Positions 19,473 to 38,373 of a stretch of DNA of 64,000 nt are shown one piece after another; position 1 is the first letter of the stretch; every line of letters starts with the position of its first letter. Both the position numbers and the translations under genes were made by a program. The stretch spans positions 78,368,001 to 78,432,000 of the forward strand of contig NC_079170.1 of the NCBI RefSeq assembly GCF_947568905.1, read 5' to 3'. The notes under the pieces are model-generated. The model saw nothing but the letters and a program-made list of their open reading frames with translations. It did not search any database and was not told where the DNA came from. The stretch comes from Ostrea edulis (taxonomy: Eukaryota).

Positions 19473-22400
19473 ATGGATATTTTCTGGTCAGCACTTACAT
19501 ATGTAATTCTTGTCGTTCGTGAAGCAAACCCAGTATTTCATGAAGATCATAACATTACGCACCAGGGAAGCGATTTTGGTTTCAACTATACACATGTATT
19601 ATTCCAAACCATTCTTCTTTGTGGGACAGATTTAATCTGTAACAAGTCTTTGCTGAATGTATTCGACATCCCAATCCAGTCAGTATCAGCTAAAGCACGA
19701 TGTGGGAACTGTTCCTGCGATTGCTTCAACTTCACCCCCGCAATCAATTGCTGCCCCGATATCATCTTTCAACATGGGCTTCTGGAATGCAAGGATGTAC
19801 AAATTTTGTCCAAAACAATTGACAGAAAAGAAGTTGTTGCCTCCTGCCCAGTCGGAACAAGCCCGGAATTATCACAGGAATGCACAATGAAACGATCTAC
19901 TATTGACGTAGTGCTTCAACCTCCAACAACCAGTGATTTGACACATATTTCATACCTGAATAAAAATTGTGGTGCATGTAATAAGGCAACCAACTTGAAA
20001 GAATGGAATATCATGTTCGGATGCTCAAAAGAAGTAGATTTCAATTATCTATCATCCTATCAAGAAATAGTAGATCTGGCAACTGTGCAAGCATGTGATA
20101 TTAGATTTAGTCCTCCCAATTCCTTGCAAAATTGTTCGATGCATATCCGTGAAAAAATCTCATTTTGCAATGTGACAGGGTCATGGCAGAATTATGATGT
20201 GCAAATAGAAAAAGCATGCCTTAGCTCCTACGTCGTTGCAATAGGCATGTTCAAAAACATTTTTTGTGCCATGTGCAATCCACCAGAATTTAAAGAGGGA
20301 TTCCTGATTGACGAATGCGACAATTCTACCAGCATATACAGTGAAGCATGTCGGTTTCTGCCGTTTCAGGAAGCATCGTTTCCATACAAGAACTACTTTT
20401 GTTTTATTTGCAACCATGGTGACAACAATACATTGCACTATAAAGATGTTGATCTCGTTGAATCACCATTTGAGTCATACGTAAAAGAAGGAGAATACCC
20501 ATATCAGTTTAAGTTTACAATTGCTTATAATGTCGATGATGTTAACCAGTACATGAGCAGACTCTTAAAAACATCGAATCTAAATGAAACGGTTTCCAAG
20601 CCTTCAACGGCAAAAAATACATATAAAAGGGAAAACCAATTTCAATGTTCAAAAACATTTGAATTTGGCGATCTAGGGGGACAAATATTTTCAACACACT
20701 TTAACCCAACTCCGCCCGAAGATACATCTACCTCAGATGCGAATACTTTATCCTCGATTAATATAACTAATTTAATCCGAATGAGTTTCGCTTTTTCGAG
20801 ACATGGTACCTGTACACCAGGATTATTGCCAAACTACACCATTCCTCTGCAGAAACAATGCTCCTGTACTGTAGGATGTAGGTCAGATTGTTGTGACGAT
20901 TTTGCCTTAAAAGTTCCGTGGACTTGTATTGATGATCGTTACCATAGAGATGGGAATAAGAAAGATTTTTTGGCGATTGGTGGATGTATGGAAGATGAAA
21001 ATATGGAACATCTGTGCAGCAGTGAGAAGACCCATCATTTTTATCAGGCATTACCGGTTACCTCAAAACACGGATATAAAGAAAATTACGTTAATTTCTT
21101 TTGTTATTTGTGCAACAGAAAGACAATTGACAGAAATTATCCCAATGTCACTGAAAATATTACAAAGGAAATCGAAATTTGGCCTTTGGTTGTATTTTGT
21201 ACTGTATACGTGAATCACAGGAACTTTCATTCACTCCAAAGTCTGATTGAATATGTAAACCAGAGCTCATGTGTACTGGAATTTTCACCACCTGCTAATT
21301 CTTCTAGATGTAGCGAAAACTGCAACGAAGGCCTGACTGAAATAGTCGAAAAATGTAACAAATCTAAAACTTGGTCCAATTTAAATGAAGAAATCCTATA
21401 TGCATGTGAGAATTCTGATTCATTTAGATTTCCCCGAATCAAGCTGGATAACACCATCTACAAAAATAAATTCTGTACAATTTGTAATCCTTTCAAAGGA
21501 AATATAGCAGATAGTTACTGCAGCGATTTCTCTCTACATTCGAATGTTAATCAAGCGTGTAAAGAATTTCCGAGCATAAACGTTTGCCATCCATACAAAA
21601 ATGTCTTTTGTGAAATGTGTCATAATGGTGGCATTGAATCGTATTGTTATGAAGAATTAGAAGCTAACGGAGGTTTAACAGATATTCCGGGTCCCACTCT
21701 ACCACCTTCTCCTTATGTTGGAACTTTCAGATCAACTTTCACCTTTTCAGCGTATGACACTTACGACACTGGTATTGACAAGTCAAACATAAAATGCCAG
21801 CAATACCAAATCTTTGATGATTATCAGGTAGGTACATGTAGCTCATATACATATTGCGTGATGATTCAATGACTGCTCAAATGTTATAATTGAAAAATGC
21901 TCCAAAATATAATCAGAACAAGGGTTGTCCAAATATAATACCAATAACAAAGGTAATCATAGTAAAGACTTAAAATGTAACCCGAATATAGATTGTCCAG
22001 ATTTGATCATGATAAAGAGTGCCCAATGCAAGCATAACAAAGACTGCAACTGAATTAACATATAAAGGGTGCCCAAATGCAATCATAGTAAAAGCTTCTG
22101 AAATGTTATAAGAAAGGACGGAAAAAAATTTCGAACGTAAAATGACAAGTGTTACTTCTCCTTTAATTCCTGTTTGATATTAAAAGATTTAACACCATTC
22201 TGAAGTCAATTTCTGTTTGATATTAAAAGATTTAACACCATTCTGAAGTCAATTTCTGATGAAGAAGCGGAGTTATTTAAAAACGTGAATTTAGCATCTC
22301 TTATCATATTTTTAAAAAATATGATTACACTAGTATAAACACACAGGAAAAGGTTACAGTGTTTAATGAAATCATTATACATGCATAAAAGATTGTTTTA

Positions 22401-22796: not shown

Positions 22797-22827
<31 letters not shown>

Positions 22828-24435
22828 CAGAATACTTGCAAAAATTTCACATGCTTTCCCGGGAAGCTACTGCGAAATGACACATGCGTTTCCTTGCTGA
22901 TGGAGGCGTCTAATTTACGTTATACTTGGGCCTTAAAGCTCGAGTTCATTAACCTTGCATTGATTAACACAACGGTTAAAGAATCGATAACCAAAATAAG
23001 GAATTTCATTTCCCAAAATATCCATATCCTATTCAACACTTATGTCTTTGTTGAGGATTTCATATCAATGAGTAGAATCGGCTGCAGTGATGTATTTTCG
23101 AAGAACGGAGAAGTGTTGTTGTACTTAAAAATGTTCATAAATGACACTGTTAATAGAGATGAGATGGAACATAAACTACTCAGTTTCACTGACAGTCGTG
23201 TTGATTGGAATTTGTCAGATATGTTAGCACAGGATTGGAATGGATCTATTATGAACGTTAGAGTTTCAAGAAGTCCACAATCCTTATTCTTGCCTTCGTT
23301 TTTGTGGAAACTTGACAAAAAGACCCACTGCTTCGTCCAGGCAGAAAACTTGAGTCACGGTCCGGCAGTCTACAGAAATGTGCTGGTAAACCCGATGTTG
23401 ACATGCAAACAAGTTATTGTGAAGGACGGTGACTTTGGAGTAGCTTGGACAAAGATAGGGACGAAATATTCTTTCTTAGGCTTCAGTCTTTCCTCTCATC
23501 AATTTGTCTCGTCTGACAGTGGTGGGGTACGCGTGTGCGCAGAAGAAATACCATTCTACACAAAGACAACGACGGTATCGAAAAACGACCTGTCACCGAT
23601 ATTAATCGTAACCCTCGTTTGCATTATCATTTCTTTAATCTGCTTGATCATAACATTTGTGACATACTGTATGTTCTCAAGTCTTAGAACCCTGCCTGGA
23701 ATGAACAACATGTGTCTGGTCGTTTCTCTGTTTTTAGCGCAATTGCTCATGATAATAAGACCCTCTTTCCGATCAACATGGTTATCCATAGTTTCCGCCT
23801 TGTTGCATTTTTCTTGGCTCTCCACGTTTCTTTGGTTACAAGTCTGCTCCTTTCATGTATTTCGTGTCTTCAGTGCAAAAGGTCAATCTGACTTTCTTGG
23901 ACGGCAAAGCAGAAAAATTGTTATCAAATATTCAATTTACGCATACGGCAGTTCCGCAGTTATAGTTCTGACTAATATCGTCATCACATTGATCGTCACG
24001 AATGGAGAAAATACGGGATATGATAAAACATCCGCTTTGATGACGTATTCAGTGGCATTCATTGCCACTCTTATAGTCCCATTAGCACTTGTTTGCATGA
24101 CAAACATTGTGTTTTACATCTTCACTGCGTATAAGATATATTCTACCCCCAAAATAGAAAAGACAACCGGAAGTAGGGTTCACTTCAGTGTGTATGTGAA
24201 GTTATTTACCTTGACGGGGCTGTCTTGGATTCTACAGATAATAGATACCTTTCTGGAGATGTCCATCTTATCGTATCTTGTTGCTATCCTCAACGGCTTA
24301 CAGGGTTTGTTTCTAATGATCAGTTATGTATGTAATGGGCGAGTTTGGAGGATGTACATGAAAGCGTGTTGCAAGACGCCTTCCGATCGGGATATCTCAA
24401 AAGCGAGTACGAAAACAGACGTCACGAAAATATAA
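19473..24435 (+). CDS. Receptor 1: Cys-rich-ectodomain class B-like (Methuselah/latrophilin-like) 7TM receptor, 1319 aa. Coding exons 19473-21827 and 22831-24435
   Basis: Hydrophobic N-terminus MDIFWSALTYVILVV. Donor CAG|GTAGGT and acceptor poly-T-ACAG|AAT join in phase 0. Seven hydrophobic segments with LRTLPG..SLFLAQ, HFSWL..W, YVKLFTLTGLSW, LNGLQG motifs. Confidence 0.88.
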
Positions 24436-33891: not shown

Positions 33892-36800
33892 ATGAACTTC
33901 ATTTGGTACATATCAATCTCTGTGATCGTAATTGTTGGAAAAACAAAGCAAATATACTATGAGGAAAATATTCCGATGCAGTTTAGAGGAGACTTCATGT
34001 TTAACGTATCACACTTAATTTTACAAAGTGCTCTTTATTGCGGAAGTGACATAATATGTAACAAGTCTTTACTAACTGTGTTCGGCATTCCACACGGATC
34101 AGGATCAGGTAAGACAAGGTGTGGGAGTTGTTCCTGTCGTGAAGATTACCCATCTCCCTACTCTTTACAAAATTCCTGTCCAGATGTTTTCTTCAAACAT
34201 GGGCTACGGGAATGCAGGGATGTAAATATTTTATCAAAGGAAAAGTTTTTAAAAGAAGTGGTTGCTTCCTGCCCAGTTGGAACAAGCCTGAATTTATCAC
34301 GGGAGTGTACAAAGGATCGATTTAATGTGGAGATCTTGCTTCATCCTCCCGTATCTAGTCATACAAGAGAGGTATCCTACCTAAATAAATACTGCGCTAT
34401 TTGCAATCAGGAGACTAATGGGAAGGAATGGAATGCAATGTTTGAATGCCCAAGATCGGTTGATTTCAACTTTCTTTCATCGTACCAAGAGATACTAAAT
34501 CTGGCAGGTCAAGAATCATGTAGTATATTGTACAATTCTCCTAATTCAAATGGAGACTGCGATAGGAAATACGATGGAAAATTGGCATCATGCAATGTAA
34601 CGGGATCATGGCTTAATTACGATGAACAGATAGAACAGGGGTGTCTCAGTTCTTATGATGCTCCAATTGGCATCTACAAAAACATTTTCTGTGCAATGTG
34701 TAACCCACCTACATTTCAAGAGAGTGCCATGATTGACAAGTGTGACAATTCTACCAGCATATATAAGGAAGCATGTTCTGTTCTGCCAATCCAGGAGGCT
34801 TCTTTTCCATACAAAAATTTCTTTTGTTTTGCTTGCAACCACGACGAGGACAACACCAGATACTATACTGATATTGATTACAAATCGGCCCAAGAAACAT
34901 ATAAAGCGAATGAGAAATATCCATTTCAGTTTGAAATTTCATTTTCTTACAGTGAGAATAATGTTGAACAGTACATCCGCGAAATGAATTCGGAGTCCAA
35001 TCTAGGGCAATTAATATCAGAACCAACAAGAAAAGAAGAAACATTTAGAAACGAATATCAATTAAAATGTCCAATTATACAGAGAAACTGGTCATTAGTA
35101 GACAAGGAATTTCCAGGAGAACAAAGCAAACCGTACAAAAATATTGAAATGGAATCACCTGTATCTGAACTGAACCCATTACATATGATCACAACATATC
35201 CTAAAATTAACATAACCAATTTAATCCGAATTAGTTTCGCGTTTTCGCGATATGGCACCTGTACACCAGGGTTATTGCCAAACTACACCATTCCTCTACA
35301 GAAACCTTGCTCCTGCACTGTAGGGTGTAGGTCAGATTGCTGTGACGATTTTGCTTTAAGTATTCCCTGGATTTGTATTTCTGAAATCCTTTGTGATAAA
35401 AACGGTAAAGGTAAAAAATATTTGACGGTAGGTAACTGCACTGCAGATAGAAAAATTGGACGTTTATGCACTGATAACAATACTTTGCATTTTTATCAGA
35501 TATTTCCAGTAACGGCGAGACACGGAAACAGGGAAAGTTATGCTAATTTTTTCTGCTATTTATGTAACAAAAATATGAATGGCATAAAATATACGAACAT
35601 CCTTGAGAAAGCTACACGAGAGGTCGCTGTTTGGCCTTTGAAAGTTAAATGCAGCAATTACGTAAATCACAGAAACTTTTATTCGTTACAACATCTAATA
35701 GAGTATTTTAACCAAACATCGTGCGTAATGGGTTTCGTACCACACACTGATGCATCAGAGTGCAAGGAAACCTGTAATTATGAACATTTTAACACTGTAG
35801 GAAGATGCAACGTATCTGGAACTTGGTCCGTGTTCAACATAGACATCCTTAATGCATGTGAATATTCAGAAAATTTTAGATTTCCCTCCGTTCAGCTGGA
35901 TGGAACAATTTTTAAAAATAAATTTTGTGCAATTTGCAATCCGTTTGAATCAAATCATACAAATATACCCTGCCGAGAGTTTCCCGAGAACTCCAGCGTT
36001 GTGAAAGCCTGTCAAGAATTTCCAGATGTCAATGTTTGTTTTCCCTACAGGAATGTGTTCTGCGAAATGTGTTTAAACAATGGCACTGAATCTGCATGTT
36101 ATCAGGGAATAGAAATTGATAAAGGTTTAACAACTTTAGTACCTACGCTTTTGACGACCATGCAACCCCTTCCTCCAGAGAATTTGTGGACGTTCAGATC
36201 CACATTCGGTCTAGGAGAATATGACGACCCCACCGCCGTCACTGAAAACAAACATCTTTCAACATGTCGAGATAATCAAGTCTTTGATGACTTACAGGTA
36301 AATGCAGTTCTTTTATTATAAGGAAATGTGCTTAATATGTTTCAAAATTGCAATTGTTTTTATAACTTTTCGACACTCAAGAAATGAGGGAATGTGAAAA
36401 ATCTATTTAGCTTTAAAATTAGAATAATGCTGTTAAATCTGAAGAACTTTATAATCATTTGACGTAGTTAATCTATAACAATGAGAATACCCACTACATT
36501 TAAGAGATGAGGTATGGGATCACCACACAATCATTATTACTAATTTTAGATATGTCTACTTTATCATCTCAGTAAATCATGATCATGCACATTTGTCTGT
36601 GTCTGTAAAAGATGTTGGCAGCAAATATATTTTATAACAAGCTTATGACTAATCTTAAAATCAAACAAAACTAAAAAAAATATATAATGAACCAGTCAAT
36701 TGATTCTTCAATCAATGTCATGCTTTTCTATGTATGATGATCGAAAGTGTCTGTGTTTTTCTCCTCATTAACAATATATCGTTTTATTACAGCAAATATG

Positions 36801-38373
36801 CAGAAATTTGACATGCTTTCCGGGCAAGGTGAGAAGAAATAAATCCTGTGTGTCACTGCTGGCTGTTACCTCTAAGTTACGATATACTCTAGCTGTGAAG
36901 ATTGAAATTTCTACCTCCACAGTAATCAATGCAACTGTTAAAGAATTAATAGAAAGAATACGGGGATACATTACAAAAAAGATCAAACTGCAGTTCAGTA
37001 CCAACGTTTTCATCGAAAAGATTGGACTAATGAGTTCAGTCAGCTGCAAGAAACCATTTACTGCGGTGAAGGAAGTGTTTTTATACCTGAAAATTTTCGT
37101 TGACGGACTTGTTAATCGGGATGAAATGGAACAGAAACTAGTCGACTTTACTGAATCAACAGCTGACTGGGATCTGTCGAACAAACGAAAACCAGAATGG
37201 ATGTTAAGAGTTAAAGTTTCAAGACATCATCAGTCTCTCTCCTTGCCTTCATTTCTGCAGAACCCTAATGAGACCAGCCACTGCTTTATCATTAAAGATA
37301 TTGAGAGTTATCGATCTGAAATACATAAGAATGTGTATGTGAGCCCATTGCTGATGTGTCCACAATTCATTTTGAAGGACAACGAATCTGGACTTGATCA
37401 TGTAAACGCTGGGGGCGAATATCCCTTCTTAGATACCCCTTCTTTCCATTACAAGTTTCCTTCCACAGATAGTGGTCAACTCCGCAAGTGTATCGAAACA
37501 AAACAACCGATGACATCTGAAACTGATGATTTCATTCTTACAATTCTTACAGTCGTTTCCTTGATTATCTCTCTAATTTGCCTGTTCATAACATTTGTGA
37601 CGTATTGTATGTTTCCAAGTCTCAGAACTCTGCCTGGAATTAACAACATGTGTCTGGTTGTGTCTCTGTTTTTAGCGCAGTTTCTCATGATAATAAGACC
37701 GATTGTCAAATCAACAGCCTTAACCATAGTTTCCGCGTTGTCGCATTTTTCTTGGCTGTCCACGTTTCTCTGGCTTCAGGTCTGTTCATTTCATATGTTC
37801 CGTGTCTTTAATGCAAAAGGTCGATCAGAATTTTCCGGAAGTAAAGGTAAGAAAAGAGCAAAGTTCTATGCCTTGTACGCTTTCGGCAGTTCCACATTTA
37901 TTGTCACAACTAATATTATCGTTTCGTTGATAGTCACTGATGGGGCAAATTCAGGATACGGCAACATGTTAACTTTGATGACGTATAAAACGGCATTTAT
38001 TGTCACTCTTATCGTCCCGCTGATTCTAATTTGTATCACGAACATCATATTTTATATGTTAACCGTTTATAAAATTCATTCCACCCCGAAATTAGAAAAG
38101 ACCTCCGGAAACAGGATTCATTTTAGCGTGTATGTGAAACTGTTTACCCTAACAGGACTGTCTTGGGTTTTGCAGATAATAGACACGTTTTTGGATATCT
38201 CAGTCTTGTCGTATTGTGTTGCAGTTCTCAACGGCCTGCAAGGGTTATTCATTTTTGCTAGTTATATTTGTAATGAACGAGTATTGATAATGTACCAGAA
38301 TGTTTGCTGCAAGTTTTCCGATTTTCGACCACCGTCAACTCTGTCTTCAAATACAGACACAACAAGAATGTGA
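33892..38373 (+). CDS. Receptor 2: paralogous Cys-rich-ectodomain 7TM receptor, 1328 aa. Coding exons 33892-36297 and 36793-38373
   Basis: MNFIWYISISVIVIV N-terminus; donor CAG|GTAAAT and acceptor ttattacAG|CAA in phase 0; same Cys framework and 7TM motifs as receptor 1. Confidence 0.88.

What the first reader, a model, noticed from the sequence alone, without database searches (positions are those of the whole stretch)
19600..21630. Ectodomain is an internal duplication of a ~290-aa Cys-rich module with six NxFCxxC motifs
The two halves align motif by motif (receptor 3): CSC..C..CCPD/CSC..C..CCDD; SYRNKYCAICN/TYVNVFCYLCN; W..C/WPL.V.C; SCNVTESWHNYD..AC/RCNVSGTWDNFD..AC; FKNIFCAICNP/YKNKFCKICNP; FPFKNYFCFAC/FPFENVFCEMC. 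Each module is an SMB-like head plus three [FY]xNx[FY]CxxC sub-repeats. I do not recognise the sub-repeat as a named domain.
Basis: seen in the sequence. Interest (0 to 1): 0.7.

Follow-up and report, generated by a model that had tools for sequence, protein, structure and literature searches.

The report
Duplicated SMB-DUF8401 ectodomain of oyster GPCRs
The outer part of four neighbouring oyster receptor genes really is an ancient tandem duplication of a 280-300-residue disulfide-rich module, but the module belongs to a very large, already catalogued yet unstudied invertebrate domain family (Pfam DUF8401 behind a somatomedin-B-like head) whose predicted shape matches no solved structure.

Summary
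The window holds four tandem two-exon class-B GPCR genes. In each, exon 1 encodes two homologous Cys-rich modules. N half against C half gives BLASTP E 3e-16 to 3e-20 and 72 bits, against at most 24.6 bits for shuffled halves. Each gene has exactly six [FYW]xNxxCxxC motifs, against 0.03 expected.

The coordinates given are gene 1, which has slightly different equivalents.

Each module is a divergent somatomedin-B-like head followed by a body of three homologous 4-Cys units of about 40 aa (hhalign 94-98%), with an insert of about 55 aa.

The module is not uncatalogued. All 37 relatives found by the word searches carry Pfam PF28443 (DUF8401), which the local Pfam copy lacks. A profile search finds 3,878 representative proteins. 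No relative has a functional name, and no paper mentions DUF8401.

The duplication is old and typical of the family. C-modules of oysters, mussels, scallops, clams and Solemya form one clade. Both modules evolve at dN/dS of about 0.2-0.3.

AlphaFold gives pLDDT 92.9, and no PDB match exceeds Z 2.8. Paired loss of cysteines points to 12 disulfides per module and not to metal sites.

The earlier scan note on this window (s1-274748) concerns the 7TM exon, not this ectodomain. I rate this a new member of a known but uncharacterised kind, of moderate interest.

The parts
19473..21827 (+). Gene 1, coding exon 1: signal-peptide-like N-terminus, two modules, linker and tail (785 codons, phase 0 donor CAG|GTAGGT)
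   Evidence: ORF; tblastn of Saccostrea orthologs; splice sites; intact frame
19614..20435 (+). Gene 1 N-module (SMB-like head 19689-19802; motifs at 19953-19979, 20250-20276, 20385-20411)
   Evidence: profile envelope (E 4e-95)
20436..20759 (+). Gene 1 inter-module linker, poorly conserved (dN/dS about 0.6)
20760..21644 (+). Gene 1 C-module (SMB-like head 20838-20939; motifs at 21087-21113, 21459-21485, 21594-21620)
   Evidence: profile envelope (E 2e-57)
22831..24435 (+). Gene 1, coding exon 2: ferredoxin-like stalk of about 235 aa plus 7tm_2 domain and tail
   Evidence: Pfam 7tm_2 E 9.7e-13; acceptor TTACAG|; stalk model of the gene 3 paralog
33892..36297 (+). Gene 2 exon 1 (N-module 34033-34860, C-module 35209-36096)
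36793..38373 (+). Gene 2 exon 2 (stalk + 7TM)
43670..46096 (+).
48895..50493 (+). Gene 3 exon 2 (stalk + 7TM)
55645..58050 (+). Gene 4 exon 1 (N-module 55783-56619, C-module 56959-57849); 95% identical to gene 3
61793..63388 (+). Gene 4 exon 2 (stalk + 7TM)

Best explanation
The region encodes the extracellular part of an orphan class-B GPCR. Its 7TM resembles adhesion GPCRs, but it has no GAIN/GPS domain.

The ectodomain is a tandem pair of one ancestral module. Each module is a divergent somatomedin-B-like head fused to a DUF8401 body. The body is built from three homologous 4-Cys helix-loop-helix units with an insert of about 55 aa after the first.

All 24 conserved cysteines of a module are most likely locked in 12 disulfides. 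Within each unit they are nested (C1-C4, C2-C3), and one bridge ties the head to the body. This gives a rigid, glycosylated binding scaffold, not a metal-binding motif.

The duplication happened once, at or before the origin of bivalves. Both copies have since been kept under purifying selection, joined by a fast-evolving linker.

Inferred, not shown: the two modules act as ligand- or protein-binding surfaces, and occupancy is passed through a ferredoxin-like (SEA-like) stalk to the 7TM bundle without a tethered-agonist cleavage.
For: Duplication:
- 72 bits against at most 24.6 bits for shuffled halves.

Sub-repeat homology:
- unit 2 vs unit 3, 97.9%, E 3e-13; unit 1 vs 2, 94.9%; unit 1 vs 3, 94.3%; controls 3% or less.
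- in relatives unit 3 is a full copy of unit 2, E 1e-17.

SMB-like head:
-.

Family membership:
- all 37 hits carry PF28443.1; full-length orthologs add PF00002.
- 3,878 representatives at E 1e-3 or better.
- Atlas clusters in Mollusca, Annelida and Arthropoda.

Age of the duplication:
- 127 of 173 retrieved proteins have two modules.
- 121 of 123 C-modules form one clade (support 0.925). It includes Solemya, Mercenaria, Argopecten, Pinctada, Mytilus and the oysters.
- The Pomacea and Blattella repeats fall outside that clade.

Constraint:
- dN/dS is 0.23-0.28 for the N-module, 0.21-0.24 for the C-module and 0.62-0.65 for the linker.

One rigid unit:
- pLDDT 92.9, pTM 0.86.

Disulfides:
- Cys are lost in distant pairs: 3/30 (over 70 modules), 58/179 (13 or more), 33/46 (10 or more), 142/166 (8 or more), 39/45 (6 or more), 83/127, 95/124 and 190/226 (2-3 each).
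- Every conserved Cys is accounted for in 12 pairs.
- The location is extracellular: a signal-peptide-like start, upstream of the 7TM.

Receptor class:
- 7tm_2.
- Nearest solved 7TMs are ADGRL3, ADGRL2 and ADGRD1.
- No GPS, HRM or Methuselah_N hit.
- The stalk model (pLDDT 85.4) gives only generic ferredoxin-like matches, including the SEA region of Gpr126 at Z 4.4, and no GAIN match.
Against: - No function, ligand or expression pattern is known for any family member.
- Disulfide pairing rests on co-loss counts, some with only 1-3 events. I could not read model coordinates, and no chemistry has been done.
- The PF28443 model itself could not be run here, so its extent on the module is only inferred by proxy.
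- Transcription is only suggested. Exon-only contigs come from two runs of guessed kind, and none spans the junction.
- SMB similarity is weak. The window's own heads give no Pfam hit at E 1 or better.
- The stalk-to-7TM signalling route is pure inference.
Confidence: 0.75

Rival explanations
1. The CxxC-containing motifs are metal (zinc) binding knuckles, so the module is a metal-stabilised or metal-sensing domain and not a disulfide-knotted one.
For: There are six CxxC motifs per ectodomain. One family member hit a Cys4 zinc-finger Pfam model at E 0.0085 (RecR_ZnF).
Against: - The domain is extracellular.
- The number of conserved Cys is even (24).
- Cys are lost in specific long-range pairs, and each motif Cys pairs with a Cys outside the motif: 83/127, 95/124, 190/226.
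- There are no conserved His, Asp or Glu partners among the invariant columns.
- The head pairs 33/46 and 39/45 match the vitronectin SMB disulfide pattern as I recall it from memory.
Confidence: 0.05
2. The two halves only look alike because both are Cys-rich, or because the motif arose convergently. On this view there was no true duplication.
For: Identity between the halves is only 24-29%.
Against: - Composition-adjusted E values of 1e-16 to 1e-20 in four paralogs.
- Shuffled halves reach at most 24.6 bits against 72 bits observed.
- One profile matches both halves over about 300 positions: E 1e-95 and 1e-57.
- Collinear order of head, unit 1, insert, unit 2 and unit 3.
Confidence: 0.01
3. 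The duplication is a recent, oyster-specific or locus-specific event linked to the tandem gene array.
For: The genes lie in a tandem array. Genes 3 and 4 are recent copies (dS 0.036).
Against: - N and C modules are only about 25% identical.
- Mytilus, Argopecten, Pinctada, Mercenaria and Solemya proteins have the same two-module layout.
- Their C-modules form one clade with the oyster C-modules.
Confidence: 0.03
4. These are canonical adhesion GPCRs whose ectodomain works through GAIN-domain autoproteolysis and a tethered agonist. On this view the modules are only adhesive decorations.
For: The 7TM is most similar to latrophilins and ADGRD1 among solved structures. A stalk of about 235 aa precedes TM1.
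Against: - No GPS or GAIN Pfam hit at E 1 or better.
- The conserved stalk columns contain no CxC...HL(S/T) motif.
- The confident stalk model matches only generic ferredoxin-like folds at Z 5.6 or less, with no GAIN structure among the hits.
Confidence: 0.07

Closest known systems
Pfam PF28443 (DUF8401) proteins, e.g. Saccostrea echinata LOC133188090 (P0016, 1321 aa) and S. cucullata LOC134241298 (P0019)
   Same: Same two-exon gene. Same architecture: two SMB-like + DUF8401 modules, stalk and 7tm_2. About 50% identity over 98% of the ectodomain. Six motifs at equivalent positions.
   Different: They are orthologs or paralogs in other oysters, not identical genes. All are 'uncharacterized protein' predictions. 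The Pfam entry is a domain of unknown function. The internal three-unit repeat, the disulfide scheme and the age of the duplication appear in nothing I could find.
SMB-bearing adhesion-like / Methuselah-like class-B receptors: Nematostella NvX and planarian PARF1 (PMC3261222); SMB-positive Mth/Mthl homologs of Nematostella, Branchiostoma and Saccoglossus, and the Crassostrea expansion (PMC4768249)
   Same: Invertebrate 7tm_2 receptors with an N-terminal somatomedin-B domain and lineage-specific expansions. One PARF1 member is predicted to have two SMB domains. An expansion in an oyster was noted.
   Different: Those papers saw only the SMB domain. They did not describe the DUF8401 body or the internal duplication. 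I did not test whether the window's 7TM belongs to the Mth/Mthl clade, or whether NvX and PARF1 carry DUF8401.
Somatomedin B domain of vitronectin / ENPP1-3 / ENDOU (PF01033; PDB 1OC0, 5GZ4, 9FTW)
   Same: The core CxC-x3-C-x5-CC-x-D ... C spacing is shared. A profile of the heads finds these SMB domains almost exclusively. The co-lost pairs 33/46 and 39/45 correspond to the vitronectin C19-C32 and C25-C31 bridges (bridge pattern recalled from memory).
   Different: The window's heads fall below Pfam detection. The C-module head lacks the first Cys pair. The last SMB Cys appears to bridge to the body (58/179) instead of closing the SMB knot.
Adhesion GPCRs (latrophilin ADGRL3, ADGRD1)
   Same: The 7TM similarity is the best among solved structures: E 3e-14 to 1e-8. 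Both have a large modular Cys-rich ectodomain.
   Different: No GAIN/GPS domain. A DUF8401 module is not listed among the N-terminal domains of vertebrate adhesion GPCRs that I know of (from memory).
Drosophila Methuselah ectodomain (PF06652)
   Same: A disulfide-rich ectodomain directly preceding a GAIN-less 7tm_2 receptor. The paper describes 10 Cys forming five disulfides.
   Different: No Methuselah_N hit. No structural match of the module to any PDB chain, the Methuselah ectodomain included.

Membership tests
Pfam PF28443 (DUF8401) | Significant match to the PF28443 profile HMM | not testable with these tools
   The local Pfam-A copy lacks this model: no hit for either ectodomain exon at E 1 or better. 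By proxy, all 37 proteins found with the window's module or with a relative carry precomputed PF28443.1, including orthologs 51% identical over 98% of the region.
Pfam PF28443 (DUF8401) | Sequence homology to proteins annotated with the family, over the body of the module | tested here: met
   E 4e-32 to 1e-4 for the single module and E 6.5e-240 for the exon. Fragments that lack the SMB head (P0007-P0009, P0012-P0014) still carry PF28443, so the Pfam domain lies in the body. Profile envelopes: E 1e-95 (N) and 1e-57 (C).
Somatomedin B (PF01033) | Match to the Pfam model at or above its threshold | tested here: not met
   The window modules give no hit at E 1 or better. 19 of 115 family modules hit at E below 0.01, best 1.4e-4.
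Somatomedin B (PF01033) | Cys framework CxC-x(3-5)-C-x(5)-CC-x-D ... C and similarity to solved SMB domains | tested here: met
   The framework is present in both heads. For the head profile against the PDB, 13 of 16 hits are SMB domains (ENPP, ENDOU, vitronectin, SUSD2), best E 5.7e-4. This is weak but specific.
Somatomedin B (PF01033) | SMB fold and disulfide knot | tested here: inconclusive
   Co-loss of 33/46 and 39/45 fits two SMB bridges. The whole-module fold search returned no SMB structure. The head was not modelled alone.
Adhesion GPCR (class B2) | 7tm_2 transmembrane domain related to ADGR receptors | tested here: met
   PF00002 at E 1e-11 to 1e-13. ADGRL3 at E 3e-14 is the best solved relative.
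Adhesion GPCR (class B2) | GAIN domain with GPS autoproteolysis motif before TM1 | tested here: not met
   No GPS or GAIN hit at E 1 or better. No CxC...HL(S/T) in the 39-sequence stalk alignment. The stalk model is ferredoxin-like, best Z 5.6, with no GAIN chain listed.
Methuselah / Mth-like receptors | Methuselah_N ectodomain (PF06652) | tested here: not met
   No hit at E 1 or better.
Methuselah / Mth-like receptors | 7TM falls inside the Mth/Mthl clade of PMC4768249 | not tested
This is a lead only.

The most novel reading that the evidence does not exclude
The SMB-like head plus DUF8401 body is a new disulfide-rich fold, built from a triplicated 4-Cys helix-loop-helix unit. It may be the ancestral ligand-binding ectodomain of a huge, overlooked protostome (perhaps metazoan) clade of GAIN-less class-B GPCRs, the same clade earlier papers glimpsed only as 'SMB-containing adhesion-like / Methuselah-like receptors'. 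The bivalve two-module form would then be an ancient elaboration of it.
Probability: 0.3. Interest if true: 0.6.

Novelty: new member of a known kind. Interest (0 to 1): 0.35.

Why it matters
The family is very large: 3,878 representative clusters at 50% identity, and 588 at E 1e-30 or better. It is attached to a signalling 7TM domain across molluscs, annelids and arthropods. Yet it has no ligand, no structure and no literature.

This report adds four things:
- the module anatomy (head, three homologous units, insert)
- a testable 12-disulfide scheme
- a confident model with no solved analogue
- the dating of the tandem duplication to the bivalve stem

Together these give concrete construct boundaries for expressing and solving the domain and for deorphanising the receptors.

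For this locus alone, the result is a correct but ordinary annotation: four intact members of a catalogued orphan family.

Tried and rejected
- Local Pfam scan of the ectodomain exons: no hit, because the model is missing from that copy.
- PDB sequence search with the module profile: 0 hits at E 10 or better.
- Foldseek against the PDB, VIA-align wide, and VIA second look on the module model: nothing beyond Z 2.8. The best was a 37-residue Kazal-like overlap that I do not regard as meaningful.
- ESM Atlas searches by shape and by features: they returned only the family itself.
- Literature: no paper holds 'DUF8401'. A broad mollusc / adhesion-GPCR search gave nothing specific.
- A homolog search seeded with the cockroach member, to find named arthropod relatives: four unnamed fragments only.
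- RNA evidence: no run on record as RNA holds the stretch. Contigs of two guessed-RNA runs cover exon parts only, and no contig spans the exon 1 / exon 2 junction, so splicing is inferred from GT-AG sites and orthologous protein models, not seen.
- GAIN/adhesion reading of the stalk: rejected.
- Metal-binding reading: rejected on the co-loss pattern.
- I could not read model coordinates, so no S-S distances were measured.
All searches and folds used single exons or parts of database proteins by reference.
Full report
**What is in the window**

The window has about 36% GC and no N runs. On the + strand it carries four paralogous genes. Each is made of one long ectodomain ORF and one ORF of about 530 aa that holds a Pfam 7tm_2 domain.

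Full-length Saccostrea proteins of 1321-1331 aa align across both ORFs of every gene with no residues missing at the junction. The junctions have canonical phase-0 GT/AG sites.

| Gene | Coding exon 1 | Coding exon 2 |
|---|---|---|
| 1 | 19473-21827 | 22831-24435 |
| 2 | 33892-36297 | 36793-38373 |
| 3 | 43670-46096 | 48895-50493 |
| 4 | 55645-58050 | 61793-63388 |

All exon-1 frames are open.

Every search and fold used one exon, or a part of a database protein, by reference.

An earlier scan note on this window (s1-274748) calls the genome flat oyster. My hits agree with an ostreid origin: the best orthologs are in Saccostrea, and a more distant paralog is named from Ostrea edulis. I did not verify the species.

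**Check of the observation**

The finding's coordinates (19600-21630) cover the two modules of gene 1: N 19614-20435 and C 20760-21644. Gene 1 has slightly different equivalents.

The N half and C half of each ectodomain align with composition-adjusted BLASTP E values of 4e-18, 3e-16, 1e-19 and 3e-20. Two hundred shuffles of the gene 1 C half reach at most 24.6 bits, against 72.0 bits observed.

Each ectodomain has exactly six matches to [FYW].N..C..C, against 0.03 expected from shuffles.

**Anatomy of a module**

Alignment with relatives shows a collinear plan:
- a head with the spacing C-x2-C-x-C-x3-C-x5-CC-x-D ... C
- unit 1: CP.G ... C ... PV.S ... YxNKxCAxCN
- an insert of about 55 aa with three conserved Cys
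- unit 2: CNVTGxW..YD..IE.AC ... FKNxFCxxCN
- unit 3: a degenerate copy of unit 2 in the window's genes, and a full copy in many relatives

An HMM of unit 2 finds unit 3 of relatives at E 1e-17. It finds units 1 and 3 of the window genes at E 1e-4 to 1e-6.

Profile-profile comparison of the sub-alignments:

| Pair | Probability | E value |
|---|---|---|
| unit 2 vs unit 3 | 97.9% | 3e-13 |
| unit 1 vs unit 2 | 94.9% | 4e-8 |
| unit 1 vs unit 3 | 94.3% | 1e-7 |
| controls (head, insert) | 3% or less | - |

The unit is a 4-Cys element of about 40 aa, not just the NxFCxxC motif.

The head is SMB-like:
- 19 of 115 family modules hit Pfam Somatomedin_B at E below 0.01.
- UniProt names Mytilus and Pomacea members 'SMB domain-containing'.
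- A profile of 70 heads hits almost only SMB domains in the PDB: ENPP-type phosphodiesterases, ENDOU, vitronectin and SUSD2, best E 5.7e-4.
- The window's own heads are too divergent for Pfam.

**What family it is**

The local Pfam copy gives nothing for the ectodomain. The ESM Atlas and the precomputed annotations of every homolog found (14, 19, 4) name PF28443, DUF8401. This is a Pfam 38 entry absent from the local library.

Fragments that lack the head still carry PF28443. The Atlas lists PF01033 separately. The module is therefore a divergent SMB head plus DUF8401.

Full-length relatives combine PF28443 with PF00002.

An exhaustive profile search finds 3,878 representative proteins at E 1e-3 or better, 2,200 at 1e-10 and 588 at 1e-30.

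Named members come from Saccostrea, Ostrea, Mytilus, Pinctada, Argopecten, Mercenaria, Solemya, Pomacea and Blattella. Atlas clusters add Annelida and Arthropoda. All names are 'uncharacterized', 'hypothetical', 'SMB domain-containing' or 'GPCR family 2 profile 2'. No paper in the library contains 'DUF8401'.

**Age of the duplication**

Of the 173 retrieved proteins and the four window genes scanned with the module profile, 127 have two full modules, 46 have one (many of these are fragments), one has three and one has four or more.

In a maximum-likelihood tree of 298 modules, 121 of 123 C-modules fall in one clade (support 0.925). All N-modules fall outside it.

That clade holds the C-modules of the window genes and of Saccostrea, Mytilus, Argopecten, Pinctada, Mercenaria and the protobranch Solemya. 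The second modules of the snail Pomacea and the cockroach Blattella lie outside it.

The duplication therefore happened once, at or before the bivalve ancestor. Multiplication in other lineages was independent.

Among genes 1-3, dN/dS is 0.23-0.28 for the N-module, 0.21-0.24 for the C-module and 0.62-0.65 for the linker. dS is about 1-1.5, so these ratios are approximate. Conservation across oyster orthologs is even over both modules and drops in the linker. Genes 3 and 4 are recent copies (95% identity, dS 0.036).

**Structure**

AlphaFold2 on the gene 3 N-module, with a 115-row alignment, gives mean pLDDT 92.9 and pTM 0.86. All five models lie between 91.3 and 92.9. This indicates that head and body form one compact unit.

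Each unit is modelled as a short helix ending at its second Cys, a loop, and a second short helix that starts at the CxxC.

Searches for a solved analogue:
- Foldseek against 350,542 PDB chains: nothing better than E 2.7.
- An exhaustive VIA-align pass over 48,161 representatives: five chains at Z 2 or more, best Z 2.8 (37 residues, Kazal-type).
- The second-look pass: nothing.
- The profile against PDB sequences: no match.

The tool's own note says models without a clear match usually still reach Z 7-8, so this model is unusually isolated. A weak or missing match does not prove a new fold, and the head and units were not modelled separately.

**Disulfides or metal**

I could not read coordinates, so I used co-variation of Cys presence. 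In 298 modules, Cys columns are lost in specific distant pairs (numbering of the gene 3 N-module):

| Pair | Co-loss events | Note |
|---|---|---|
| 3/30 | over 70 | essentially all C-type modules |
| 58/179 | 13 or more | ties head to body |
| 33/46 | 10 or more | |
| 142/166 | 8 or more | |
| 39/45 | 6 or more | |
| 83/127 | 3 | |
| 95/124 | 2-3 | |
| 190/226 | 3 | |
| 240/271 | 1 | |
| 251/268 | 1 | |
| 9/35 | 1 | |

With the invariant 207 and 223, this accounts for all 24 conserved Cys as 12 pairs. The pattern is nested C1-C4 / C2-C3 in each of the three units, plus one head-to-body bridge.

Pairs 33/46 and 39/45 correspond to the C19-C32 and C25-C31 bridges of the vitronectin SMB domain. 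I recall that pattern from memory.

This evidence, the extracellular position and the lack of conserved His argue for disulfides and against zinc knuckles. Support for some pairs is thin.

**Rest of the receptor**

The 7TM exon matches 7tm_2. Among solved structures it is closest to ADGRL3, ADGRL2 and ADGRD1 (E 3e-14 to 1e-8).

The roughly 235 aa between the ectodomain exon and TM1 are conserved in 37 full-length relatives. They fold confidently (pLDDT 85.4, pTM 0.85) into a beta-alpha-beta-beta-alpha-beta sandwich.

That model matches only generic ferredoxin-like domains (Z 5.6 or less). The matches include the region of zebrafish Gpr126 that I take to be its SEA domain (Z 4.4). There is no GPS motif, no GAIN match, no HRM and no Methuselah_N.

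The receptors are adhesion-like in their 7TM, but they fail the defining GAIN/GPS test.

**Link to the literature**

SMB domains on invertebrate class-B receptors have been noted before:
- amphioxus adhesion GPCRs (PMC2246102)
- the Nematostella NvX cluster and planarian PARF1, one member with two SMB domains (PMC3261222)
- Mth/Mthl homologs of Nematostella, Branchiostoma and Saccoglossus, with an expansion in Crassostrea (PMC4768249)

None of these papers describes the body behind the SMB domain. I could not test whether those receptors carry DUF8401, or whether the window's 7TM belongs to the Mth/Mthl clade. This remains a lead.

**Expression**

No run on record as RNA holds the stretch. I laid four runs on 5,501 bases, within the 6,000-letter limit.

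Contigs of two runs guessed to be RNA (organism A, about 96% identity) cover only exon parts of gene 3. They cover nothing in the unique intron bins. No contig spans the junction. This is suggestive only.

**Verdict**

It is not an unknown domain in the database sense. It is the two-module form, standard in bivalves, of the catalogued but entirely uncharacterised SMB + DUF8401 ectodomain of GAIN-less class-B GPCRs.

New here:
- the homology of the three units
- the disulfide scheme
- the single ancient duplication
- the confident model without a solved analogue

I file it as a new member of a known kind, with moderate interest.

Noticed in passing
window 9782-11053 (+): An intact 423-aa ORF with two B-box zinc fingers (E 1e-16) and weak NHL / LDL-receptor class B propeller hits. 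It looks like a TRIM-like gene lacking a RING in this ORF, upstream of the receptor array.
   Followed up: partly
window 46097-46219 and 58051-58158: The ectodomain ORFs of genes 3 and 4 read on past the GT donor into an in-frame His-rich stretch (HHHHDHHH...). This is an intronic CAT/CAC microsatellite, not coding sequence, and could mislead ORF-based gene calls.
   Followed up: partly
window 46288-46655, 47208-47391, 47576-47943: Segments of the gene 3 intron have depths of thousands to hundreds of thousands in all four runs, with many rearranged joints. They look like very high-copy repeats or transposable elements.
   Followed up: no
window 45875-46096 vs 57850-58050: Genes 3 and 4 are 95-99% identical through both modules. 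The 67-codon tail after the C-module is only 75% identical, with dN/dS 1.5 and a length difference: a local replacement or rapid divergence just before the splice donor.
   Followed up: partly
window 22798-22824: An uninterrupted run of about 27 T precedes the acceptor (TTACAG) of gene 1 exon 2. This is a far longer polypyrimidine tract than in the other three genes.
   Followed up: no
P0008 (224 aa): A DUF8401 fragment is filed in NCBI under a Candidatus Thiodiazotropha metagenome-assembled genome. It is most likely host (bivalve) DNA binned with the symbiont and not a bacterial gene.
   Followed up: no
P0127 (Blattella germanica PSN54745.1, 1544 aa): A cockroach protein carries five module-like stretches that lie outside the bivalve N/C clades, so it multiplied the module independently. 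A search seeded with it found only four unnamed fragments.
   Followed up: partly
window 45000-45412 and 49046-50465: Contigs of two runs from 'organism A' match only exon sequence of gene 3 at about 96% identity, with many fixed differences. They could be transcripts or a closely related population or species.
   Followed up: partly
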